Below, piece by piece: positions 3,365 to 62,336 of a stretch of 64,000 nucleotides of DNA (positions within the stretch are counted from its first letter, which is position 1; every line of letters starts with the position of its first letter). Both the position numbers and the translations under genes were made by a program. The notes under the pieces are model-generated. The model was not told the origin of the DNA, ran no database searches, and saw only the letters and a list, made by a program, of their open reading frames with translations. Location: the IMG/VR virus record IMGVR_UViG_3300021520_000002, positions 62,001 to 126,000 of that record; one strand, written 5' to 3'.

Positions 3365-4336
3365 GTGTCTGATTTAAATAGTATGATGGAGATGCTTGAA
3401 GTACCACAAGATATAATTGATGATATAATTGAAACTGAAAAAAGTGCTGAGATTCCTGAAAAACAATTTGAAATTATCATACCCGATATTACACGAGCAT
3501 ATTCTTTATTTGATATTGATAAATTTACAAAAGAATTACAGGAAAAATCTGCCGCTAAAAATCAAGCATATAGAGAATTATTTCAAAATATTAATGCTTA
3601 TGATTTGGCAAACAATTGTATTAGAGATATTGTTTATAAATTATTAAATACACCAGTTGAATCTTTTGCCGATAAATGGCTACCAGTATTATTAAGATCA
3701 ACTTTGGGAAATGCTATACATAATTTTATACAAGACAATTCTAATCAATTTACGGAACGAGAAGTATCAATAAAAATACCATCAAAAAGAGTTTCTGTTA
3801 GATTAGATAATTTAATTGGTCCAAATATTTTAGTCGAGATTAAAAGTTTACCTTATTCAGAATATGAAAAAATAGTTAAATCTTGTAAGCCAAGAATTGC
3901 TGATTTTTATCAAGCAGTAGCTTATAAATATTTCTTAGAAAATTTTCTTGAAGAAGCCAAAAATTCTGGAGAGAAGACAAGAACTCCACCTCCAGCTTTA
4001 AATAATTATGATATTCAACAAATTCAGTTTATTTATGTTGCTCATGATGTTGTAGCAAATGATGTTGAATCACTTGCTGAAATATTAGAGAGAATTAAAC
4101 AACTTAAAAGACTTCTTAATTCTAAATCTAATACATTCTTCTTCATGACAACATTAGCAATTGATGTTACAAATAATATTGCTGATCCATATATTAATTA
4201 TATTAAAAATAAATTAGAGCGTATTAATCATTATTTAGATAGCGGCAAGATTCCACCAAATGATGATGAATTTGTAGATACAGGTAAATGTTTCTTCTGT
4301 CTCTACAAGAAATTATGTAATCAGAATAAGAGATAA
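3365..4336 (+). CDS. Cas4-like PD-(D/E)XK exonuclease with 4Fe-4S cysteines (solo, no CRISPR)
   Basis: N-terminal C-x-R, GNAIH, RLD, EIKS, QAVAY and C-terminal CFFCLYKKLC. Confidence 0.8.
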   Translation: MSDLNSMMEMLEVPQDIIDDIIETEKSAEIPEKQFEIIIPDITRAYSLFDIDKFTKELQEKSAAKNQAYRELFQNINAYDLANNCIRDIVYKLLNTPVESFADKWLPVLLRSTLGNAIHNFIQDNSNQFTEREVSIKIPSKRVSVRLDNLIGPNILVEIKSLPYSEYEKIVKSCKPRIADFYQAVAYKYFLENFLEEAKNSGEKTRTPPPALNNYDIQQIQFIYVAHDVVANDVESLAEILERIKQLKRLLNSKSNTFFFMTTLAIDVTNNIADPYINYIKNKLERINHYLDSGKIPPNDDEFVDTGKCFFCLYKKLCNQNKR

Positions 4337-4339
4337 CAA

Positions 4340-4379
4340 ATAGAGAAGGGTTAATTCCCTTCTCTATATTCTTTTTTTT
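4340..4379 (+). terminator. intrinsic terminator
   Basis: ATAGAGAAGGG-ttaatt-CCCTTCTCTAT followed by poly-T. Confidence 0.75.
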
Positions 4380-4389
4380 GGAGATAATT

Positions 4390-4629
4390 ATGATTGTTAC
4401 TGAAGATGTTGCTAAAAAAGAAATGAAATGTTATAGAAATGTTAATGATAAAGGTGAATTTGGAACTTGTTTAGGATCAATTTGTATGGCATGGGAATGG
4501 TATCCTATAAATCAAATTAATAATGATTATGATTTTAGCGCTGGTCCAGTTGAAAATATTACTTTCACATCAAACAAAGGATATTGTGCTGCGGCTGGTA
4601 GACCATATGGATATAGAACAGGAGCTTAA
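4390..4629 (+). CDS. small Cys-containing phage protein (CxxSxCMAWxW...GYC)
   Basis: GGAG RBS before ATG 4390 (ORF track 4378); motif typical of small phage proteins. Confidence 0.6.
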   Translation: MIVTEDVAKKEMKCYRNVNDKGEFGTCLGSICMAWEWYPINQINNDYDFSAGPVENITFTSNKGYCAAAGRPYGYRTGA

Positions 4630-4631
4630 TT

Positions 4632-5084
4632 ATGATTAGTATAACTTATTTATTCGAATCAGAAAAGGAGATCTTGCCGATGAAAATTGGTATTATAGGA
4701 TATTCAGCAAAAAAATTTGATAAAAAATTAGCTGAAAAATTAATTATAGAAGGTTTAAATAAATTCAAAGCTAAAGAAGGAGATGAGTTAGTTTCTGGAT
4801 TAACTGATTTAGGAATACCAGGATTAGCTTATAGAATCGGTAAAAAAAGAAATATGAAACTTATCGGTATTGCTTGTAAAAAAGCACACGATGAAGATAG
4901 TGTTTGTTATCCTGTTGATAAAGAAATAATAGTTGGAGATAATTGGGGTGATGAATCAAAAACATTTTTAAAATATATAGATATGTTAATTAAAGTTGGT
5001 GGTGGAAAACAATCAATAGAAGAATATAATAGATTCAAAGGTCCTAAAATTGAGTTTGAATTGGCCGCTAAAGAGGATAATTAA
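4632..5084 (+). CDS. SLOG-superfamily (DprA/LOG/YspA-like) nucleotide-binding protein with N-terminal MISITYLFE leader
   Basis: MKIGIIGYS, LVSGLTDLGIPGLAY, LIGIAC, VGGGKQSIEE match the SLOG Rossmannoid pattern. Confidence 0.7.
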   Translation: MISITYLFESEKEILPMKIGIIGYSAKKFDKKLAEKLIIEGLNKFKAKEGDELVSGLTDLGIPGLAYRIGKKRNMKLIGIACKKAHDEDSVCYPVDKEIIVGDNWGDESKTFLKYIDMLIKVGGGKQSIEEYNRFKGPKIEFELAAKEDN

Positions 5085-5410: not shown

Positions 5411-6007
5411 ATGTTATCAATAGGTTTTTTATTTGAAGATGAAGAAGATGATATTGATATGGAACAATATTTTGAAGATCGGACAAATTATCATATTGGT
5501 CTTGTAAATAGTTATTTAGATGAAATAATTGAATTACATGATCCACGTTTAGATCTTGCCGTTTTAGAACAAGAAAAAGAAATACATGATCAAAGTAAAT
5601 TTGAAGAACCAGAATATGAACCTTATGTTAAATTAACATGGAATTATTATTTAAAAGATCATGGTAAAAAAATTGATTCTTCACAAGATGAATTAAAGAA
5701 AATACAAGCGGCAACTTTTCATCATGTGAAGAATAATCAACATCATCCTGAATCTTGGGACGAGAATAGTACTATAGAAAGTATCAACAGTAAAGATAGA
5801 GATAAACCAGGGAAAATTGTTGATGCAACAAAAATGTCACTTAATTATATTGCAGCAATGGTAGCTGACTGGATGGCTATGTCAGAAGAGAAAGGAACAG
5901 ATCCATATAAGTGGTGTGAAATGAACATCAATAAAAGATGGAAGTTCACAGAAGAACAAGTTAAATTAATTTATGATCTATTGGATAAGATATGGAAGAA
6001 AAAATAG
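5411..6007 (+). CDS. HD-superfamily (DUF5662-like) phosphohydrolase with N-terminal MLSIGFLFE leader
   Basis: YH...HDQSKF...HHVKNNQHHPE...MVADWMAMS. Confidence 0.75.
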   Translation: MLSIGFLFEDEEDDIDMEQYFEDRTNYHIGLVNSYLDEIIELHDPRLDLAVLEQEKEIHDQSKFEEPEYEPYVKLTWNYYLKDHGKKIDSSQDELKKIQAATFHHVKNNQHHPESWDENSTIESINSKDRDKPGKIVDATKMSLNYIAAMVADWMAMSEEKGTDPYKWCEMNINKRWKFTEEQVKLIYDLLDKIWKKK

Positions 6008-6189
6008 ATGTTAAAACAGAACTAGAAAGATGTAAAAAAGATCCTATATATTTTATAGAGAATTATGTTGAATCGAAAGTTGTTCAATTATTAGATTTTA
6101 AAAAGACTAAAGATGAAAAAATTAAAAAGGAAACAGAAAAAAGAATATTAAAAGTATTATTAGAACATGCTGAAAAACTAGAATGGTGA
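5992..6189 (+). CDS. 65-aa protein resembling the N-terminal helix of the large terminase
   Basis: ELERCKKDPIYFIENYV versus EWFKCRENPFYFILNYV in the terminase at 15449. Confidence 0.6.
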   Translation: MEEKIDVKTELERCKKDPIYFIENYVESKVVQLLDFKKTKDEKIKKETEKRILKVLLEHAEKLEW

Positions 6190-6197
6190 GGTAAATC

Positions 6198-6773
6198 ATG
6201 ATATCAATTCTTGCCGAATATGAAAAAGAATTTTTTACTTACAATACAATATCTTCTGATATGTGGTATGAACTTATTAAAGAAGCTAAAAAAGAACAAA
6301 AAATTTTTTTTGATCTTGAAAATAATGAATCTAAAAAACAACAGAGAACAATAAAAATATTAGATAAAAAAGATACTCCACCAACAAATGAATATATTTT
6401 TAATTGTGAATTATTTACAGCTGGAGGAGATTGGGAAGTTCCTGTAAATTATTTTAGGTGTCAATTAATAAAAGGTTATTTAGAAGATAGAACAAGTTAT
6501 AGAAGACCATATTTTATTTATATACCTAAAAAAATAGAAGGAAATTATAATCTTGTTCCAAATTTAAAATCTGATGGAACTTGGCATGCTCCTGATAATT
6601 CTTATTATAAAAAAGGAATTGATCCAGAAGTGAATGATAAAGATTGTTGGAAAGCTTTAGATGGATATTTGAGAAAAATAGTAGAAGATTATATTGAAAA
6701 AAGAAAGTTAAAACAATTGGAAGGACAAACATCAATTGAAGGAAAAGAATCAAATGAGAATACAACTTCGTAA
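6198..6773 (+). CDS. hypothetical protein with MISILAE leader variant
   Basis: GAGGT RBS; 191-aa ORF. Confidence 0.7.
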   Translation: MISILAEYEKEFFTYNTISSDMWYELIKEAKKEQKIFFDLENNESKKQQRTIKILDKKDTPPTNEYIFNCELFTAGGDWEVPVNYFRCQLIKGYLEDRTSYRRPYFIYIPKKIEGNYNLVPNLKSDGTWHAPDNSYYKKGIDPEVNDKDCWKALDGYLRKIVEDYIEKRKLKQLEGQTSIEGKESNENTTS

Positions 6774-6785
6774 AAGAGGGTACTT

Positions 6786-8987
6786 ATGAATATAACGGGA
6801 CAAAGTCAATACTCAAAAATTGTGTCAGGGTTAAGACAACCAGGTAGAAAATTTGTGGGTCAAGATTTAAATTTAATTTTTGTATATCCAATTTTATTAC
6901 CCAACAAATTACCTGATCTACAAAATGTAGAAATGATAATTAGAAATTTTATATCTACAACATTTTTAAAAGAGATATTCATACAAAACACTATTAGTAT
7001 GATTTCTTTAGCTAATCAGATTCAACCTCTTTCTGACGAGATGGGAATAAGGATAGATCCAAATGCAACAGTTGCTCAAGTATTTCAAAACAATCAAACT
7101 GTTGGAAATATTCCAGTTGCTACAAGATCTGATACTTCTCCAAATTATTCTGTAAGTACACAGTATAGAGATCAAATACAGAGAAAGATTAATGAGAAGA
7201 CAGCTGTAATTCAGAAAGTAGTAAAAACAGATCCAGTGATGAGTAAATTAAATCCTTATGTTGAAATGATAACTATGGGAAATCTTATAGATGTACCAGT
7301 TATTGTAGGTACAAAAACATTTCAAGTAGACACACTTTCATTAATTCATATTTTATTAGCGGCTGTTGCAACAGATACAAAATTAGATAGTATTACTAAT
7401 TTAAATATTATTTGTGATGAACTTAATAAATTAGATGAAACAAAATATTGGAGATTATTAAATAAACTTGCCGCTGAAGATAAATCATTTCATTTATGGT
7501 CATGGATTAAATCTAGTGGAGTTAAAGTTGGAGAAAAAATATCTAACAAAGCAACATTACATATTCCTGAAACATCTAAATTTGTTAGAACTCAAGCAAA
7601 AAAAGTTGGAACTTTTGCATCTAGAATTCAAACTCAGCGAGGTAGTCTCGCTGGTGATATAATTAATCCTCTTAGAGGTAAAACTGGAGATTTAAGTGAT
7701 TTTGCTGAAAGTTCAGCATTTGAAATATTACGAGTTATGAAAACTAATTTAGATCAAACAAGATTATTTTTTAGATTTGTTTTAGATCAAAAATTTCTTA
7801 AATCACAAGTTGGAATTGAACCTTTTGATGAAAAAAGTATGACAAAAGGAATGACAGATAATCTTATTCCAGATTTGAAAAGATCAAGAATATTAACAAT
7901 TTCTGGTTTTCAAGATTTGTTAGCAGCATTTGGACTTTCTGCTTTAAGATCCAGTATAGTTGCAATTGAACCAGAACCAGATGTTGTTGGTTTAGATTTA
8001 CTTAATATAATTAATTCAGAAATTAATGAAAAACTTATTACTAGTCTTACTCAAAGTAATGAAGATGTATTTAAAACTATTTCAAATGGAATGAATTCAG
8101 CTACTATTGAGGCGACTAAACAACAAATTGATGTTATTAAGAATTTATGTAATTTTGATATCGGCAAAGAGATGGTTGATACTGGTAATAAACTAGCTGA
8201 TAAAGAATTACCAGTTAATTTTAACAATCAACAATATGTAGATTATGCTCATACTTTATCTCAACTTGGAGAATTATCTTCTGTAAAAAATAAACAGATT
8301 GAAAATTTGTTATCTCAATTTAGAGATATTGGAACAGAAGTTGTTGGGGTTTTAAGAAATGAAATAAAGACTGAAATTGCACAACGTTTAAAAACTATAT
8401 TTCAAACTTATAGTCAAAATTATACGGCAAATAATGTACCAAGAGTAGCAATTGTATTGACTACTCCATCAAATCAAGTAACAACAGATCAAGTTAATCG
8501 AGGAATTATACCAACAACACTTAATTATCTTACAGAATATTTTTATTTTTTATATTTAAAAGCTTTACAAGTAGCTATTTGTAAACTTATAACTAAAGTT
8601 GAAGTAACAGTTGATACAGCATCTAATGACATTACTGATTGGCCGAATTATACATTGGTTTTGCCGATAGAAATTGTTTCAGCTTTACATGCTGCGATGG
8701 TTTCTAAAGGATGGGAAAGTTTAACTACAGATAAAGAAGGTAATTATTTAACGAGTGAAGAACTTTCTAAAGCTGGAATAATTCATGTGACAGAAAATTA
8801 TGTTAAAGGTATAGTTAAGTTTGTAAGTATGAAATTAGGAGTACCAAATTTTGTTGTAGTCGATTCTAAAAAAGGTGATGTTTATTATAAGTTAATGCAT
8901 CAATCTGGAATCAATAAAACAAAATTATCTACGTTAGAATTATTTGTTAAAGAATCAATAAATAAACCAATTATCAATTATTATTAG
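6786..8987 (+). CDS. large hypothetical protein, probably virion-associated
   Basis: 733-aa ORF with GAGGG RBS in the + strand structural block. Confidence 0.75.
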   Translation: MNITGQSQYSKIVSGLRQPGRKFVGQDLNLIFVYPILLPNKLPDLQNVEMIIRNFISTTFLKEIFIQNTISMISLANQIQPLSDEMGIRIDPNATVAQVFQNNQTVGNIPVATRSDTSPNYSVSTQYRDQIQRKINEKTAVIQKVVKTDPVMSKLNPYVEMITMGNLIDVPVIVGTKTFQVDTLSLIHILLAAVATDTKLDSITNLNIICDELNKLDETKYWRLLNKLAAEDKSFHLWSWIKSSGVKVGEKISNKATLHIPETSKFVRTQAKKVGTFASRIQTQRGSLAGDIINPLRGKTGDLSDFAESSAFEILRVMKTNLDQTRLFFRFVLDQKFLKSQVGIEPFDEKSMTKGMTDNLIPDLKRSRILTISGFQDLLAAFGLSALRSSIVAIEPEPDVVGLDLLNIINSEINEKLITSLTQSNEDVFKTISNGMNSATIEATKQQIDVIKNLCNFDIGKEMVDTGNKLADKELPVNFNNQQYVDYAHTLSQLGELSSVKNKQIENLLSQFRDIGTEVVGVLRNEIKTEIAQRLKTIFQTYSQNYTANNVPRVAIVLTTPSNQVTTDQVNRGIIPTTLNYLTEYFYFLYLKALQVAICKLITKVEVTVDTASNDITDWPNYTLVLPIEIVSALHAAMVSKGWESLTTDKEGNYLTSEELSKAGIIHVTENYVKGIVKFVSMKLGVPNFVVVDSKKGDVYYKLMHQSGINKTKLSTLELFVKESINKPIINYY

Positions 8988-10994: not shown

Positions 10995-11030
10995 ATATCG
11001 GCAAGATCTATTACTAAATCTTGCCGATAT
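10995..11030. repeat. intergenic palindrome copy 1 (ATCGGCAAGAT...ATCTTGCCGAT)
   Basis: ATATCGGCAAGATCTATTACTAAATCTTGCCGATAT. Confidence 0.95.
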
Positions 11031-15389: not shown

Positions 15390-15421
15390 ATCGGCAAGAT
15401 CTGAAAAATGATCTTGCCGAT
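15390..15421. repeat. intergenic palindrome copy 2
   Basis: ATCGGCAAGATCTGAAAAATGATCTTGCCGAT. Confidence 0.95.
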
Positions 15422-22253: not shown

Positions 22254-22288
22254 GATCGGCAAGATCTAGAAATAGAATCTTGCCGATC
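22254..22288. repeat. intergenic palindrome copy 3
   Basis: GATCGGCAAGATCTAGAAATAGAATCTTGCCGATC. Confidence 0.95.
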
Positions 22289-29272: not shown

Positions 29273-29308
29273 ATATCGGCAAGATCTATTTCTAGGTCTT
29301 GCCGATAT
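29273..29308. repeat. intergenic palindrome copy 4
   Basis: ATATCGGCAAGATCTATTTCTAGGTCTTGCCGATAT. Confidence 0.95.
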
Positions 29309-32487: not shown

Positions 32488-32976
32488 ATGCTTTTAGTAG
32501 AAGTTTTATTTGAACAAACTCCATCTCAAGTTCCTCCGGTACAAATTATTCAACATGTTACTCATACTCCAAAAGAACCTGATTCTAAATCGGTGGAGCC
32601 GAAACAACAGGAACAACCTGCCTCACAGGCACAAGCTGTTCCTCAGGAACAACAAATTCCACAGGGTCAGGAAACTGGAGACGAAGAAACAACTGGGGAA
32701 GAAATTCCAGAAGATGGACTTGGTGATGGTGGTCAGATGCAAGAGGAAGGTATTTCACCAGATCTTTTGCCGATTAAAAAATATTATTTGATTAGTAAAT
32801 TAAAAGAATTAAAGAATCAACTTATAGAATATAGTTTACAGAACGATGAACTTGATATCTTATTAAAATTTGCAGACAATCTATCATACAGTTCATTATT
32901 AAATGTTGGACTAATAATCACAGATGTTATTGGACAACAATTAGCGAGGTTAAAAGATGGCAAAAATACCAATTAG
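32488..32976 (+). CDS. acidic Gln/Glu-rich prohead core-like protein with MLLVEVLFE leader
   Basis: Between portal and protease; disordered Q/E/P-rich N-terminal half. Confidence 0.55.
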   Translation: MLLVEVLFEQTPSQVPPVQIIQHVTHTPKEPDSKSVEPKQQEQPASQAQAVPQEQQIPQGQETGDEETTGEEIPEDGLGDGGQMQEEGISPDLLPIKKYYLISKLKELKNQLIEYSLQNDELDILLKFADNLSYSSLLNVGLIITDVIGQQLARLKDGKNTN

Positions 32977-33721
32977 GAAATATAATTTTATATTTGAGAC
33001 TACCTCGATTAGTTCACGTGATGATATCAAGGTTTTAGAGGAAACAAAGTTACCTAATGGAAATGGAAAAATTTCAGCTTCTGTTAGGTTACAGGAAGCA
33101 GAAATGAAAAATAGTAATAGTCGATATTACTCAAATTCAATCTGTGAATCTATAGTGAATCAGTTATCTCCAAAAGCAAGTAGTCGTTCACTTTTAATGG
33201 AGATCGATCACCCTTTGTTTGTCTCTGACGATCAAAATGTTCTCAAAAGGAGAGCATCAATTGTTGAAATTAATAATTGTGGTAGTTTATTAAGAGAGAT
33301 AAGTTTTGCTGATAGAAAAGTGGGTGGTATATTTGAAACGCTTAGTGGTTTCAAAGGTCCAGATTTATATAATATAATTATGAAAGATAAGGTTGATGTA
33401 GGATTTTCGTTGAGAGCTCTTGGAGCAGTCGAACAACTTCAGGATGGAACAATAATGGTTAAAGATCCTATCAAACCAATTACTTATGATGTAGTTTCAA
33501 ACCCAAGTCACGCAACAGCAAAAGTTCTCGAATTCTTACCAGAAAACGTTACAGATTTTATGTCTGAACATAGTATGATTTATGAAGCAGCTGATATGGA
33601 GATGCTGGATCTAGATCATATAACTGTTGCAGACAGTACAATTTCATTAACAGAATTTTTCGACGACATTTATAAACAAAAATTTTCGGAAGTTATTACT
33701 AGAATAACTTTTAGAGTTTAA
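32957..33721 (+). CDS. prohead core protease (T4 gp21-like)
   Basis: NSNSRYY, EIDHP, VGFSLRALG, TYDVVSNPS. Confidence 0.9.
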   Translation: MAKIPIRKYNFIFETTSISSRDDIKVLEETKLPNGNGKISASVRLQEAEMKNSNSRYYSNSICESIVNQLSPKASSRSLLMEIDHPLFVSDDQNVLKRRASIVEINNCGSLLREISFADRKVGGIFETLSGFKGPDLYNIIMKDKVDVGFSLRALGAVEQLQDGTIMVKDPIKPITYDVVSNPSHATAKVLEFLPENVTDFMSEHSMIYEAADMEMLDLDHITVADSTISLTEFFDDIYKQKFSEVITRITFRV

Positions 33722-33749
33722 TAATATTATATTTAAAGGAGATTTAACT

Positions 33750-35357
33750 ATGTACGAACAAGCGATATTTGAAAATTATGAAATGTTCTTAAATGAGCAT
33801 AGTGATGAATTTTCTACTCCAAGTGGAGCATTGAAACTCATTACTGACAACGGTATGTTCAGATCTTATATGGAAGGTTTGACCAACGGCCTTGATTCAA
33901 ATCAGAGAGCTGTTGTTATGTCAGTAGCAAATCGTCAGAGGGAATATCTTTTAACAGAATCCGCAAACGTTCCAGGTTCTACACTGGCATTTGGTTGGAC
34001 TGTTCTTTCTTTCCCTATTCTTGTTGATATTTATGCTGAGCCAGTTGTGTCAGAGCTTTGCAATGTTTATCCAGTATCTTCACCAGTAGCTTCAATTCCT
34101 AGAATCAAAATTATGGCCTATATTAGGGGTTATGATGGAAACGTAACTCAGGTTCGTATGCCTACATTGAATCAGGCAGTAAGACCTGGTGCACTTAATC
34201 TTACAGTAACACCAGCCGTAAGTAATAACATTTTTACTATTGCTTCAGCTGCAGTTGCTCCTGCAACAGTAACATCAGATATGTACAGAATTAACAGGAG
34301 ATATACTCTTCTTACAGCTGTTCAGATTAATGAAACAACTGCTCTTGGTCCTGTTGTTGCACATAACGTATCAGTAACAATTAAACCAGACAACAGAAAT
34401 CAGTTTGTGGGTAGTTTTACATTTAATGATAATACTCCTGCTCCTGTTGGTCCTGTAGCAATTGTTGGTACTTTAAATGGTCATATTGACTATGATTCAG
34501 GCATATTCCAGTATCAGATTGTTTATGCAGTTGGTGCAACAACTTCTACTTTTGCAACAGTTTCAGCAACTATGACTATTCGTTTTATGTCTCTGACAAC
34601 TCAGAATGGTCGTATAAAAGTTAAGATTCAGACAGAAATGACTGATGTAAGCATCGATCAGAATGAAGATTTCTTGATTGAACTTCCTCCGGAAGATATT
34701 CAGGATTTCAGAGCAATCTTTAAGATTGACATTTTGAGAACACTTTCAGAAGCTATTAAGAGACAGATCATGTTAAACAAAGATCAGGATCTTGCATTCT
34801 TCTTAGCAGCTGCAGAAGGTGATATGGCATCTAATGGCGCAGCAGAAGCATTGAATCTTGCAAGTTTTGATGTAACTGGTGGACGTTTTGAGCCTAACAA
34901 AGTCATCGACGTTTTCAAAGCAGTAATTCCTAAGATTTCTATTCTTACTGGAATTATTCGTAGAAACTTCAACATGTATCCTTCTTATCTTGTCGCTGGT
35001 TTGAAGACTGCCGCATTACTTAGATCAGTTCAGACTTTCGCTCTCCAGATGCCAGGTATTGGAAATGGCGACGGAGCAGTAGGTTGGGCAGGGGATGTTG
35101 CACAGATGTTGAAGATGAAAGTTCTTGAGTCCAATGCAATCGCTGAAGGTAAGATTTATCTTTCAACGAAAGCTCCGAACAATGCTCTCGAGAAATCAGC
35201 AATTGTAGATTTGATTTATCAACCTCTTTACATTGTAACTGAGGTAACTGATGGTCAGACCAGGAACTATGTAAGATCCAGGACACTCATTGAAATTCCT
35301 AGAACAGATGGTCTTGGTGTTATTAATATTACTGGTCTTGGCACATATTTTACGTAA
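33750..35357 (+). CDS. major capsid protein
   Basis: 535 aa directly after the protease; probable maturation site YLLTE|SA near residue 70; C-terminal YQPLY...VRSRT; highly-expressed codon usage. Confidence 0.85.
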   Translation: MYEQAIFENYEMFLNEHSDEFSTPSGALKLITDNGMFRSYMEGLTNGLDSNQRAVVMSVANRQREYLLTESANVPGSTLAFGWTVLSFPILVDIYAEPVVSELCNVYPVSSPVASIPRIKIMAYIRGYDGNVTQVRMPTLNQAVRPGALNLTVTPAVSNNIFTIASAAVAPATVTSDMYRINRRYTLLTAVQINETTALGPVVAHNVSVTIKPDNRNQFVGSFTFNDNTPAPVGPVAIVGTLNGHIDYDSGIFQYQIVYAVGATTSTFATVSATMTIRFMSLTTQNGRIKVKIQTEMTDVSIDQNEDFLIELPPEDIQDFRAIFKIDILRTLSEAIKRQIMLNKDQDLAFFLAAAEGDMASNGAAEALNLASFDVTGGRFEPNKVIDVFKAVIPKISILTGIIRRNFNMYPSYLVAGLKTAALLRSVQTFALQMPGIGNGDGAVGWAGDVAQMLKMKVLESNAIAEGKIYLSTKAPNNALEKSAIVDLIYQPLYIVTEVTDGQTRNYVRSRTLIEIPRTDGLGVINITGLGTYFT

Positions 35358-35372
35358 AATTTAGTTAAAGAT

Positions 35373-35406
35373 ATCGGCAAGATCTAAATTAATAGATCTT
35401 GCCGAT
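35373..35406. repeat. intergenic palindrome copy 5
   Basis: ATCGGCAAGATCTAAATTAATAGATCTTGCCGAT. Confidence 0.95.
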
Positions 35407-35673: not shown

Positions 35674-36570
35674 ATGGCATTAAGTGAATTTTTAAAAGCG
35701 ATGGAAATAGTTAGTAATATTAAGAAACAAGAAGTTCCACTTCCAATAGCCAGAAAGAGTGCTGTCGTAAGTCCTCTTAGGGTTGGAGACGATTTATCAT
35801 TAAGATCATCATTAACTTCACCTGTTAACTATGATAGACAAATGACTAAATTGATATTTGATTTAACAGAATTTATGGCCGCTGAAGGTCAACCATTAAT
35901 TAAAGAAAATTTTGAGTTCTTTTGTAAAACAACATCTAATATTGATAAGATTTGTTTGATTTGGGGTTTATATAAAACTACATACGAATCATTAGGAAAG
36001 AGAACTTTTAAGTGTGATAAAGAGAATTGTAAAGCTGAATTTAAACAGGATGTATTATTAGACAGTTTAGTTAAAGAAGATACTTTCTGTCCTTGGGAAG
36101 AGGAAGAACTTCCTTTTCATGAATTTATTTGGGAGATAGTTGTTCCTTATGAACAGTTTGAATTTATATTTGAAAGTAGAATACCATCAATCAGTGATAA
36201 TAACAGAGTATTAAGTAATTTATCTATTGAGTCAGTTCAGGAAAATTTTCAGACAGGTGGTAATTTATTTAGTAGAAGTGAACAAATGACACTTCTTAAT
36301 AGATCAGTTGCAATTAAGAGTGTAGTTAATCCAAATAATGTTCCTAAAACAGAAAATATGCAAGAGTTATTAATTGCTTTCAGAAAATATGTTCCTCATA
36401 TAGTTTCTGAAAAATTCTTTATTGAATACAATAAGAAATTTGATAAATATTATCCAAAATTTTATACAATGATACCTTGTCCTCAGTGTGGTAATGAAAT
36501 AAAATTCACGGTAGACCTGGAATCAGAATTTTTTCGGAGAAGCTTATTTGGTGGAGGGGAGGGCAGCTAA
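35674..36570 (+). CDS. baseplate hub assembly / tail chaperone (T4 gp26-like)
   Basis: IDKICLIWGLYKTTYE, CxxxxC, RIPSISD, C-terminal CPQCG...EFF. Confidence 0.7.
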   Translation: MALSEFLKAMEIVSNIKKQEVPLPIARKSAVVSPLRVGDDLSLRSSLTSPVNYDRQMTKLIFDLTEFMAAEGQPLIKENFEFFCKTTSNIDKICLIWGLYKTTYESLGKRTFKCDKENCKAEFKQDVLLDSLVKEDTFCPWEEEELPFHEFIWEIVVPYEQFEFIFESRIPSISDNNRVLSNLSIESVQENFQTGGNLFSRSEQMTLLNRSVAIKSVVNPNNVPKTENMQELLIAFRKYVPHIVSEKFFIEYNKKFDKYYPKFYTMIPCPQCGNEIKFTVDLESEFFRRSLFGGGEGS

Positions 36571-36769
36571 GAATTATAAATATTTTGTTGATACATTTAT
36601 CTTATATCAAGCTATGTTTGACAATACTGGAGATCTTAATTCTATTCTCAATCTTCCATATCCTTTATACAATGATATTATTCTCAAACAGATTGAAGAG
36701 AAGAAAAGAGAAAAGAAGCTTCATGATGAAAATATGAGAAAAATGAAAACACAACCGAAAAAGAAATAG
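36548..36769 (+). CDS. small baseplate assembly protein (gp51-like/tail chaperone second ORF)
   Basis: Overlaps the gp26-like gene; ILNLPYPLYNDIILKQIEEKKRE. Confidence 0.55.
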   Translation: MVEGRAAKNYKYFVDTFILYQAMFDNTGDLNSILNLPYPLYNDIILKQIEEKKREKKLHDENMRKMKTQPKKK

Positions 36770-36782
36770 TTATCGGCAAAAA

Positions 36783-36811
36783 TTTATTTTTGGAGATTGA
36801 ATATGATAAGT
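36783..36811 (+). repeat. 29-bp direct repeat (5'UTR/RBS/start), copy B
   Basis: Identical to 35410..35438. Confidence 0.95.
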
Positions 36812-37078
36812 GTTAGTATATTATTTGAAATTGGAAATAGTCCAGAGATGAGAGATAAATTATTCAAATTATCAAATTCATATCAGAAATCAATGAAATT
36901 ATTAAAAGAACCAGAAGATATTTCTGCAAAACAAAAATTAAGTGCTGCAGGAAATAGAGCACTTCAATTAGGAAGAAGTATTTCTTATAGATTACATGGG
37001 CAAAATCCAGAAACAACCATGAAAATGGCAGGAATATATAAATCAATGCTTCAACGTGCACAAGGTGAAAAAAAATAA
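36803..37078 (+). CDS. small basic protein with MISVSILFE leader
   Basis: GGAG RBS before ATG 36803 (ORF track 36797). Confidence 0.7.
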   Translation: MISVSILFEIGNSPEMRDKLFKLSNSYQKSMKLLKEPEDISAKQKLSAAGNRALQLGRSISYRLHGQNPETTMKMAGIYKSMLQRAQGEKK

Positions 37079-37108
37079 GATCTTGCCGATAAAATTTGAG
37101 GGTATATT

Positions 37109-44259: not shown

Positions 44260-44297
44260 AAATCGGCAAGATCTATATTACAAGATCTTGCCGATTT
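44260..44297. repeat. intergenic palindrome copy 6
   Basis: AAATCGGCAAGATCTATATTACAAGATCTTGCCGATTT. Confidence 0.95.
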
Positions 44298-56424: not shown

Positions 56425-56512
56425 TGGTGGCGCTGACTGGACTTGAACCAGCATGGAGAAAATCTCCGAGAGATTTTAAATCTCTTGTGTAAACCAATTC
56501 CACCACAGCGCC
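56425..56512 (-). tRNA. tRNA-Leu(TAA)
   Basis: GGCGCTG...AGAGA-TTTAAAA-TCTCT...GTTCAAGTC...CAGCGCC A CCA; long variable arm. Confidence 0.95.
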
Positions 56513-56814: not shown

Positions 56815-56904
56815 TGGCGGAGAGCGTAGGATTTGAACCCACGAACCGCTTTCACGATTTCTAGTTTTCAAGACTAGCACCATCAGCCTCTCGGTCAGCT
56901 CTCC
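56815..56904 (-). tRNA. tRNA-Ser(TGA)
   Basis: GGAGAGC...CTAGT-CTTGAAA-ACTAG...GTTCAAATC...GCTCTCC G CCA; long variable arm. Confidence 0.95.
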
Positions 56905-58528: not shown

Positions 58529-58562
58529 TATCGGCAAGACCTATTTCTAGATCTTGCCGATA
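58529..58562. repeat. intergenic palindrome copy 7
   Basis: TATCGGCAAGACCTATTTCTAGATCTTGCCGATA. Confidence 0.95.
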
Positions 58563-60385: not shown

Positions 60386-60457
60386 TTGCAGGGGTCAGAC
60401 TTGAACTGACGACTTGAAGCTTATGAGGCTTCCACGCTACCTCTGCGTCACCCTGCA
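60386..60457 (-). tRNA. tRNA with CAT anticodon (elongator Met or Ile2), CCA not encoded
   Basis: TGCAGGG...GAAGC-CTCATAA-GCTTC...GTCAG-TTCAAGT-CTGAC-CCCTGCA-A. Confidence 0.88.
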
Positions 60458-62301: not shown

Positions 62302-62336
62302 AATCGGCAAGATTCTATTTCTAGATCTTGCCGATT
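62302..62336. repeat. intergenic palindrome copy 8
   Basis: AATCGGCAAGATTCTATTTCTAGATCTTGCCGATT; core is the exact reverse complement of copy 3. Confidence 0.95.

What the first reader, a model, noticed from the sequence alone, without database searches (positions are those of the whole stretch)
4632..4700. Palindrome arm sits at the junction between the leader and the SLOG domain
A perfect 13-bp arm AGATCTTGCCGAT (4669-4681) separates MISITYLFESEK from the natural domain start MKIGIIG. It supplies the AT of that ATG (4680) and is overlapped by an AAGGAG RBS. This looks like the scar of a leader-to-cargo fusion at the repeat and could give two isoforms, tagged and untagged. Arm-like sequences also occur in three other leader genes: TAGATCTTGCCG at 5550, TCTTGCCGA near 6209 and AGATCTTTTGCCGAT at 32760.
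Basis: partly seen in the sequence, partly recalled or inferred. Interest (0 to 1): 0.75.

Follow-up and report, generated by a model that had tools for sequence, protein, structure and literature searches.

The report
Stray hairpin arm inside a gene linker
A 13-base half of a hairpin that this uncultured jumbo phage repeats between its genes lies inside one gene, between an added N-terminal tag and the enzyme's original start, but it arrived after the tag was fused on and is not the scar of that fusion.

Summary
AGATCTTGCCGAT lies at 4669-4681, overlaps AAGGAG (4665-4670) and supplies the AT of ATG 4680. It is a full-length solo copy of the arm of a hairpin present about 30 times in this 285.6-kb phage. 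Every clean copy is intergenic, 4-16 nt after a stop codon as a rule.

About 70 homologues start at the MKIGIIG position. The tag MIS[IV]..LFE is specific to this phage clade, and residues 1-17 model as coil ahead of a LOG/SLOG fold.

The fusion-scar reading fails. Five related lineages carry the same tag-SLOG fusion without the arm. Both flanks of the junction have counterparts in the closest relative. Identity to other arm copies stops exactly at the 13 nt. The arm is therefore a later, lineage-specific patch in a variable linker.

Arm-like words in other tagged genes belong to a genome-wide excess of the core TTGCCGAT (97 in coding DNA against about 8 expected). Enrichment in tagged genes is weak.

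- The internal start site is exceptional (1 of 1244 internal ATGs has a 6-nt Shine-Dalgarno), so tagged and untagged isoforms are plausible but untested.
- At 36772/37078 a tagged gene really was inserted into a hairpin that is intact in a relative.

The parts
4620..4624 (+). Shine-Dalgarno AGGAG for the upstream (tagged) start, 7 nt before ATG 4632
   Evidence: Spacings of 5-7 nt are the commonest in this genome.
4632..5084 (+). ORF of 150 aa: tag + linker + SLOG-fold domain
   Evidence: Outside gene callers called this 150-aa form on 19 contigs.
4632..4658 (+). Tag (leader) MISITYLFE, one of about 37 such N-termini in the genome
4659..4679 (+). Linker SEKEILP. KEILP is written in five consecutive rare codons, AAG GAG ATC TTG CCG.
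   Evidence: Joint codon frequency 3.8e-6. Length and sequence vary among relatives.
4665..4670 (+). Internal Shine-Dalgarno AAGGAG, 9 nt before ATG 4680
4669..4681 (+). Solo, perfect, full-length copy of the hairpin's right arm, read as (E)ILP(M)
4680..5084 (+). Ancestral start codon and SLOG-fold domain. The first strand begins at K18.
4241..4253 (+). Left-arm-like AGCGGCAAGATTC inside gene 3365-4336. It differs from the relative by 5 clustered changes.
4340..4372 (+). Ordinary intrinsic terminator (GC stem + T8), a different class from the arm hairpins
5551..5563 (+). Arm-like AGATCTTGCCGTT in the DUF5662 gene, read GAT CTT GCC GTT (DLAV)
6209..6217 (+). TCTTGCCGA inside the tag of gene 6198-6773, read as ILAE
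32760..32774 (+). Arm with 2 extra T inside the scaffold-like gene 32488-32976
10997..11028 (.). Full hairpin before the tail-tube gene. It is conserved at the matching site in relative L001 (16431-16462).
15390..15421 (.). Full hairpin before the large terminase gene
22255..22287 (.). Full hairpin
29275..29306 (.). Full hairpin. Its loop is inverted relative to the matching copy in L064.
35373..35406 (.). Full hairpin 15 nt after the major head protein gene
44262..44295 (.). Full hairpin 8 nt after the tail sheath gene
58530..58561 (.). Full hairpin among minus-strand genes, followed by a U-tract and the motif CATATAGAAATAATA
62303..62335 (.). Full hairpin among minus-strand genes
36772..36779 (+). 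Left half (ATCGGCAA) of a hairpin split by an insertion
36780..37077 (+). Inserted cassette: start region plus tagged gene 36803-37078
37078..37090 (+). Perfect right arm of the split hairpin. Its first A is the last base of the inserted gene's stop codon.
32957..33721 (+). Head maturation protease (Peptidase_S80 family), relevant to what the tag may be

Best explanation
SHOWN
- The 13 bases are a genuine solo copy of one arm of a hairpin, ATCGGCAAGATCT - loop - AGATCTTGCCGAT, that this jumbo phage places between cistrons.
- The copy lies in the 21-nt linker between a clade-specific N-terminal tag (MIS[IV]..LFE) and the ancestral start of a SLOG-fold gene.
- There it fills the spacer between a retained Shine-Dalgarno sequence and the ancestral ATG.
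- The tag-SLOG fusion is present in five relatives that lack the arm.

INFERRED
- The fusion is therefore older than the arm, and the arm is not its scar.
- The arm most likely arrived later as a short patch copied from a hairpin arm. The same unknown force makes the arm's core about 10-20 times too common in this phage's coding DNA.
- It was tolerated because neither the protein linker nor the spacer constrains sequence at that spot.
- The gene makes the tagged protein.
- The strong internal start site probably also yields some untagged SLOG protein.
For: 1. Hairpin family. There are 27 clean and about 4 degenerate copies. All clean ones are intergenic. Nearly all lie 4-16 nt after a stop, and most lie 14-35 nt before the next ATG.
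2. The same sequence stands at matching sites in relatives.
3. Homologues. P0002-P0007 (60-83% identity) carry the tag plus a linker of 5-10 residues. More distant homologues start at the KIG motif.
4. DNA of five tagged relatives shows no arm.
5. L003 has the same linker length, with AAGGAG + 9 nt + TTG at the same place. So the Shine-Dalgarno belongs to the gene and the arm replaced only the spacer.
6. The closest relative is collinear on both sides of the junction.
7. Identity to every other arm copy ends exactly at the 13 nt.
8. Coding DNA holds 49 sense + 48 antisense cores against 5.6 + 2.4 in synonymous shuffles. Arms at up to 1 mismatch number 19 + 9 against 0.7 + 0.25.
9. Lineage-specific cores often differ from the relative by 3-5 clustered changes within well-conserved flanks.
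10. A second perfect arm, in the same reading frame, sits at codons 3-7 of a topoisomerase subunit, another unconstrained N-terminal stretch.
11. The internal start is exceptional. Only 1 of 1244 internal in-frame ATGs has a 6-nt Shine-Dalgarno, and only 2.2% have 5 nt or more.
12. Four of the five relatives keep a Shine-Dalgarno-like word plus ATG or TTG there.
Against: - P0002 (83% identical) has the peptide EEILPM in its linker, so the arm may be older than this one lineage. Its DNA could not be fetched.
- Loss of an ancestral arm in five lineages cannot be formally excluded.
- The arm spans exactly from the Shine-Dalgarno to the start codon, which is suggestive of function.
- No mechanism for patch copying is demonstrated.
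- No expression data cover the site. The metatranscriptome contigs miss it.
Confidence: 0.6

Rival explanations
1. Recombination at a hairpin arm joined a tag module to an untagged SLOG gene, and the arm is the scar of that event.
For: - Hairpins are real insertion sites for tagged genes. At 36772/37078 a tagged gene lies inside a hairpin that is intact in relative L061.
- Repeated stem-loops are known recombination points in T4-type phages (PMC2839356, PMC4122927).
- Arm-like words are mildly enriched in tagged genes.
Against: - Five related lineages have the fusion without the arm.
- There is no synteny break at the arm.
- The arm is not in the usual hairpin position. Here the Shine-Dalgarno lies upstream of the arm, whereas at hairpins it lies downstream.
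- No left half and no shared flanks were found.
- None of 15 tagged genes in relatives has an arm.
Confidence: 0.1
2. The solo arm is a working regulatory half-site. Whatever recognises the hairpin arm, or a complementary left arm in the same transcript such as 4241-4253, covers the internal start site and sets the ratio of tagged to untagged protein.
For: - The arm spans exactly the Shine-Dalgarno-to-ATG interval.
- The stem sequence, not only its pairing, is conserved between phages about 78% identical in this protein, which suggests sequence-specific recognition.
- A word able to form 10-11 base pairs with the arm lies 415 nt upstream (and my own reading).
- The linker uses five rare codons in a row.
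Against: - The arm is absent from five relatives that keep the internal start.
- Local folding is unremarkable, with z = -1.0 and -1.35.
- With about 100 solo cores in the genome, a nearby complementary word is not surprising.
- No recognising factor is known.
Confidence: 0.2
3. Only ATG 4680 is used, and the upstream in-frame stretch is not translated into this protein. The tag would then be an artefact of ORF calling.
For: - My own scoring gene caller picked 4680 because of its stronger Shine-Dalgarno.
- P0009 was called from the internal Met.
Against: - The tag peptide is kept in frame and stop-free in seven lineages while the DNA varies.
- P0003 (L001/L002) has no Met, no alternative start codon and no Shine-Dalgarno at the junction, so there the tagged form is the only product.
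- ATG 4632 has a good AGGAG at 7 nt.
Confidence: 0.05
4. Chance resemblance.
For: none
Against: The expected number of perfect 13-mers is about 0.003 per genome. Shuffles and the backwards control agree.
Confidence: 0.01

Closest known systems
PeSL cassettes (promoter-early stem-loops) of T4-type phages (PMC2839356, PMC4122927)
   Same: - Near-identical stem-loops repeated in intergenic DNA just after stop codons.
- They mark insertion, deletion and replacement of small orphan genes between related phages.
- The split hairpin at 36772/37078 is such an event.
   Different: - There is usually no room for a promoter, with only 14-35 nt to the next ATG, and no excess of sigma-70-like sites.
- The hairpins also follow major structural genes (head, sheath).
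- The stem is a specific 13-nt word, not a G-run/C-run.
- Solo arms and an 8-nt core are scattered through coding DNA.
Uptake-signal-like over-represented words (Neisseria DUS, Haemophilus USS). From my own knowledge, not tested here.
   Same: A short word is many-fold over-represented in coding DNA, in all frames and both orientations, and occurs as inverted pairs forming hairpins after genes.
   Different: This is a phage, not a competent bacterium. No uptake or drive mechanism is known. The resemblance is in pattern only.
T4 capsid targeting sequences and propeptides cut by S77/S80 prohead proteases (PMC5694885)
   Same: - A short N-terminal peptide ending hydrophobic-x-Glu.
- The phage encodes an S80-family head protease.
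- A similar motif stands near the N-termini of the protease family, the head protein and a scaffold-like protein.
   Different: - About 37 genes carry it, far more than in T4.
- Most are small orphan genes in early-gene-like clusters.
- Neither cleavage nor packaging is shown.
Genes with in-frame internal translation starts giving long and short isoforms
   Same: A strong Shine-Dalgarno plus ATG inside an ORF, at a domain boundary, kept in most relatives.
   Different: The internal site is the gene's ancestral start left behind after an N-terminal extension. Use of either start is untested.

Membership tests
SLOG superfamily (the cargo domain) | Sequence match to a curated SLOG family | tested here: inconclusive
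   The window protein itself scores only E = 0.02 (14.6 bits against a 25.4 cut-off) to PF18171. Sixteen of 34 homologues match PF18306 and 4 match PF18171.
SLOG superfamily (the cargo domain) | Rossmann-like LOG/SLOG fold | tested here: met
   AF2 model with pLDDT 86. Foldseek top hits are LOG, Moco-carrier, TRPM MHR1/2 and YpsA, with E from 1e-5 to 1e-3 and TM about 0.6.
PeSL-type mobile regulatory cassettes | Repeated intergenic stem-loop directly after stop codons | tested here: met
   27 clean copies, nearly all 4-16 nt after a stop
PeSL-type mobile regulatory cassettes | Adjacent sigma-70-like early promoter within the cassette | tested here: not met
   There are mostly 14-35 nt to the next ATG, and promoter-like sites number 59 against 62 expected. 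Four copies are followed by a U-tract and a conserved CATATAGAAATAATA motif of unknown role.
PeSL-type mobile regulatory cassettes | Lies at indel or replacement junctions of orphan genes between related phages | tested here: met
   One clear case: the hairpin is intact in L061 and split by a tagged-gene cassette in the window. This does not hold for the junction at 4669.
Intrinsic (Rho-independent) terminators | Stable stem followed directly by a U-tract | tested here: inconclusive
   The stems fold at -15 to -22 kcal/mol. A clear U-tract follows only a minority of copies. Most run straight into the next gene's Shine-Dalgarno.
RNA-level hairpin (orientation-dependent element) | Strand asymmetry that makes sense only in the transcript | tested here: inconclusive
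   Loops read GNRA (GAAA or GCAA) in the sense strand in 15-16 copies against 3 in the antisense strand. Stem mismatches are G.U 23 against A.C 9 in the sense strand. The copies are not independent, and most sense cases are on minus-strand genes.
Capsid-targeting / prohead-protease propeptide (the tag) | Short N-terminal peptide ending hydrophobic-x-Glu | tested here: met
   34 of 37 tagged proteins against 51 of 405 others (p = 4e-24). The first Glu is at residue 6, 7 or 9.
Capsid-targeting / prohead-protease propeptide (the tag) | The phage encodes a Glu-specific S77/S80 head protease | tested here: met
   PF20034 scores 26.8 bits against a 23.4 cut-off, and two PHROG families annotated as head maturation protease match. 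His85, Ser151 and His185 are conserved.
Capsid-targeting / prohead-protease propeptide (the tag) | Cleavage after the Glu and presence in virions | not testable with these tools
   The complex prediction gave no answer. It needs mass spectrometry or an in vitro assay.
Dual-start gene (internal initiation) | In-frame internal start codon with a Shine-Dalgarno, conserved in relatives | tested here: met
   AAGGAG + 9 nt + ATG, a signal seen at 1 of 1244 internal ATGs. L003, L004, L005 and L006 keep a Shine-Dalgarno-like word plus TTG or ATG. L001 does not.
Dual-start gene (internal initiation) | Two protein products observed | not testable with these tools
   The RNA contigs do not cover the site.

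The most novel reading that the evidence does not exclude
The arm between the Shine-Dalgarno and the AUG is a switch. The factor, or RNA pairing, that recognises the phage-wide TCTTGCCGAT word gates internal initiation. One gene would then supply both a capsid-targeted, protease-processed SLOG enzyme (tagged) and a cytoplasmic one (untagged). More broadly, the word would be a genome-wide recognition signal of a new kind for a jumbo phage.
Probability: 0.1. Interest if true: 0.7.

Novelty: new variant of a known kind. Interest (0 to 1): 0.4.

Why it matters
The specific claim, a fusion scar, does not hold, so the junction itself is a curiosity.

The surroundings are more useful:
- An uncultured jumbo phage clade attaches one short tag to about 37 unrelated small proteins. 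The tag looks like a head-protease processing or targeting signal.
- The phage uses a sequence-conserved hairpin between cistrons, and that hairpin demonstrably serves as an insertion site for such genes.
- It carries the hairpin's core word 10-20 times too often inside coding DNA.

Each of these gives a concrete, testable handle on how jumbo phages shuffle and address their many orphan genes.

Tried and rejected
- Same junction elsewhere. An exact 16-mer scan of viral contigs gave 50 hits. All were chance hits in unrelated contexts, except one relative's ordinary hairpin.
- DNA of P0002, the only homologue with EILPM. It was not obtainable and was absent from genome contigs.
- Single-sequence search of viral contigs for SLOG relatives found nothing.
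- GenBank phages have no DNA match. The terminase is only about 24% identical to any cultured phage.
- Metatranscriptomes gave two small contigs at 5998-6175 and 6644-6796 and nothing over 4632-4700.
- Local RNA folding around the arm is not better than shuffles.
- No degenerate left arm lies within 40 nt. The best candidate has 7 mismatches.
- Rfam finds only three tRNAs in the window and no family for the hairpin.
- The Pfam S77 search of the genome was uninformative because its controls did not ring.
- Relatives of the topoisomerase gene with the second N-terminal arm were not found.
- Protease-tag complex prediction returned "no answer" and is not used as evidence either way.
- A Chi-like polar word was considered. 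The core shows 64 plus against 36 minus overall, with no switch along the genome and no sense/antisense bias, so this remains unsupported.

Full report
CONTEXT
The window is bases 62001-126000 of a 285,572-bp IMG/VR virus record, about 28% G+C and estimated 95% complete. It encodes:
- a UvsX-like recombinase, tail tube, tail sheath, large terminase and major head protein;
- an S80-family head protease;
- what look like a split RNA polymerase piece and a type II topoisomerase subunit.

No cultured phage is close. The terminase is about 24% identical to the best GenBank hits.

THE OBSERVATION
- arm at 4669-4681;
- AAGGAG at 4665-4670;
- ATG at 4680;
- one open frame from ATG 4632 to 5084.

The arm is one half of the palindrome ATCGGCAAGATCT - 6-8 nt - AGATCTTGCCGAT. 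This palindrome occurs 8 times in the window and 27 times cleanly in the genome, plus about 4 degenerate copies. Chance is excluded. Four other assemblies give the identical sequence.

WHAT THE HAIRPIN IS
All clean copies are intergenic. Nearly all lie 4-16 nt after the stop of the upstream gene, and most lie 14-35 nt before the next ATG. Several follow highly expressed structural genes such as the head protein and the sheath.

In the transcribed strand the loops read GAAA or GCAA in 15-16 copies, against 3 in the other orientation. Stem mismatches are G.U 23 times against A.C 9 times. This points to an RNA hairpin, although the copies are not independent.

Only a minority are followed by a U-tract. 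Four of those are followed by a conserved CATATAGAAATAATA motif. Most copies are therefore better described as intercistronic stem-loops (attenuator, processing or stabilising elements) than as classical terminators. The phage also has classical terminators, for example at 4340-4372.

The same 13-nt stem stands at matching sites in relatives whose SLOG protein is about 78% identical. In one pair the loop is inverted. Rfam has no family for it.

THE GENE
Forty-three homologues were found by sequence and 80 loci in metagenomes.
- The six closest (60-83% identity) begin with M[IL]S[IVL]..LFE and a linker of 5-10 residues.
- About 70 others begin 0-5 residues before [KR]IG[IV]VGY.
- The AF2 model (pLDDT 86) is coil for residues 1-17 and starts its first strand at K18.
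- Its best structural matches are LOG, Moco-carrier and TRPM SLOG domains.
- Sixteen of 34 homologues match Pfam SLOG cluster 4.

So tag + linker + SLOG is correct, and MKIGIIG is the ancestral start.

IS THE ARM THE FUSION SCAR?
No, for four reasons.
- DNA of five tagged relatives (L001/L002, L003, L004, L005, L006) shows the fusion but no arm.
- L003 has the same linker length with AAGGAG + 9 nt + TTG. The Shine-Dalgarno therefore belongs to the old start region, and the window's arm merely replaced the spacer.
- In an alignment with the closest relative, the segment that has been swapped is the small orphan gene upstream (4378-4629 against an unrelated 66-aa gene). Its boundaries lie at the terminator and Shine-Dalgarno on the left and at the tag's own Shine-Dalgarno on the right, not at the arm.
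- Identity to all other arm copies ends exactly at the 13 nt, and no left half lies nearby.

P0002 (83% identical) has EEILPM, so the arm may be shared by two sister lineages. Its DNA could not be obtained.

ARMS IN OTHER TAGGED GENES
About 37 genes carry the tag. The Ser codon is TCN in 22 and AGY in 14, so the peptide rather than the DNA is conserved.

Arm-like words at up to 1 mismatch are 5 in tagged genes against 1.2 expected (p = 0.007, post hoc). The 8-nt core is not enriched (5 against 4.4). Their positions vary, and none of 15 tagged genes in relatives has one.

Most in-gene copies are read GAT CTT GCC GAT (D-L-A-D-like) in the sense frame. The copy at 5551 recurs in L005 as LDLAE, but L001 and L004 have LDNS and LDND there.

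These copies belong to a genome-wide phenomenon:
- TTGCCGAT occurs 100 times outside hairpins, in all frames and both orientations.
- Against synonymous-codon shuffles, coding DNA holds 49 + 48 cores where 5.6 + 2.4 are expected, and 19 + 9 near-perfect arms where 0.7 + 0.25 are expected.
- CTT-GCC-GAT encodes 7 of 24 Leu-Ala-Asp triplets, although GCC is only 5% of Ala codons.
- Relatives show the same excess.
- Lineage-specific copies often differ from the orthologous sequence by 3-5 clustered changes. This suggests patch-wise copying or strong selection, and I cannot tell which.

At 36772-37090 a hairpin is split. ATCGGCAA stands 2 nt after the stop of gene 36548-36769. Then come about 300 nt holding a start region and the tagged gene 36803-37078. 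Then comes a perfect right arm 18 nt before gene 37109.

In relative L061 the same two flanking genes are separated by an intact hairpin. The cassette's first 28 nt match the sequence downstream of hairpin 35373. This is a PeSL-like modular insertion (PMC2839356, PMC4122927).

TWO ISOFORMS?
- Only 1 of 1244 internal in-frame ATGs in the genome has a 6-nt Shine-Dalgarno, and 2.2% have 5 nt or more.
- The linker residues KEILP use five rare codons in a row, with a joint frequency of 3.8e-6.
- Four of the five relatives keep a Shine-Dalgarno-like word plus ATG or TTG.
- The tagged form is certainly selected. The tag is kept in seven lineages, and it is the only possible product in L001.

An untagged product is plausible but unproven. 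SLOG is the only one of the 37 tagged genes with such an internal site.

WHAT THE TAG MAY BE (inference)
- 34 of 37 tags have hydrophobic-x-Glu in residues 4-10, against 13% of other proteins.
- The phage has an S80 head protease. Proteases of that kind cut after Glu, and T4 uses 10-20-residue N-terminal targeting peptides (PMC5694885).
- 44 of 50 members of this protease family carry a similar motif near their own N-terminus.
- So do the head protein (AIFE), the scaffold-like protein (VLFE) and the protease itself (FIFE).
- A complex prediction gave no answer.

VERDICT
The architecture and the possible dual start are supported. The fusion-scar interpretation is not supported. The arm is best read as a later solo copy of a phage-wide word at a permissive spot.

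Noticed in passing
window 36772-37090, relative L061:560-720: A hairpin is split by insertion of a roughly 300-nt cassette holding a start region and tagged gene 36803-37078. The hairpin is intact between the same two genes in the relative. The inserted ORF ends on a stop codon at the loop/arm boundary.
   Followed up: yes
whole genome (G000), e.g. window 3664, 8659, 40246, 50128: The 8-mer TTGCCGAT (the best-kept part of the arm) occurs 100 times outside hairpins, in all frames and both orientations. That is about 9-20 times more than synonymous-codon shuffles allow. Relatives show the same excess. The cause is unknown.
   Followed up: partly
about 37 genes, mostly genome 16.5-99 kb. In the window: 4632, 5411, 6198, 25942, 35430, 36803.: There is a shared N-terminal tag MIS[IV] followed by hydrophobic-x-Glu at residues 4-10. 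It is conserved as a peptide, since both Ser codon families are used. It is attached to unrelated proteins, including SLOG and DUF5662, whose Pfam match begins only after it.
   Followed up: partly
window 32488-35357: The scaffold-like protein (MLLVEVLFE), the S80 head protease (..NFIFE) and the major head protein (MYEQAIFE) all carry the same kind of motif near the N-terminus. So do 44 of 50 protease homologues from other phages.
   Followed up: partly
window 4378-4629 against L001:9808-10008: The small gene just upstream of SLOG is replaced by an unrelated one in the closest relative. The boundaries lie at the conserved terminator and Shine-Dalgarno on one side and the tag's Shine-Dalgarno on the other.
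   Followed up: partly
window 4241-4253: AGCGGCAAGATTC (codes SGKI) stands where the relative has AATAATAAGATAC (NNKI). That is five clustered changes creating an arm-like core in DNA that is otherwise about 90% identical.
   Followed up: partly
downstream of hairpins at window 58530 and genome 127714, 259705, 263666: A conserved motif CATATAGAAATAATA lies 20-30 nt after a hairpin plus U-tract. It may be a phage promoter at operon starts.
   Followed up: no
window 29275-29306 against L064: The hairpin loop is inverted between matching sites of two related phages (ATTTCT against AGAAATA).
   Followed up: no
genome 161332-161344 (outside the window): A second perfect solo arm, in the same reading frame, lies at codons 3-7 (MQKILPI) of a type II topoisomerase subunit.
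   Followed up: partly
window 56428-56512, 56818-56904, 60386-60457 (minus strand): Three tRNA genes.
   Followed up: no
proteins P0008, P0010, P0011, P0019: A different short N-terminal extension, M.R[FL]E.YI.E, precedes the SLOG domain in another group of homologues. This may be a second kind of tag.
   Followed up: no
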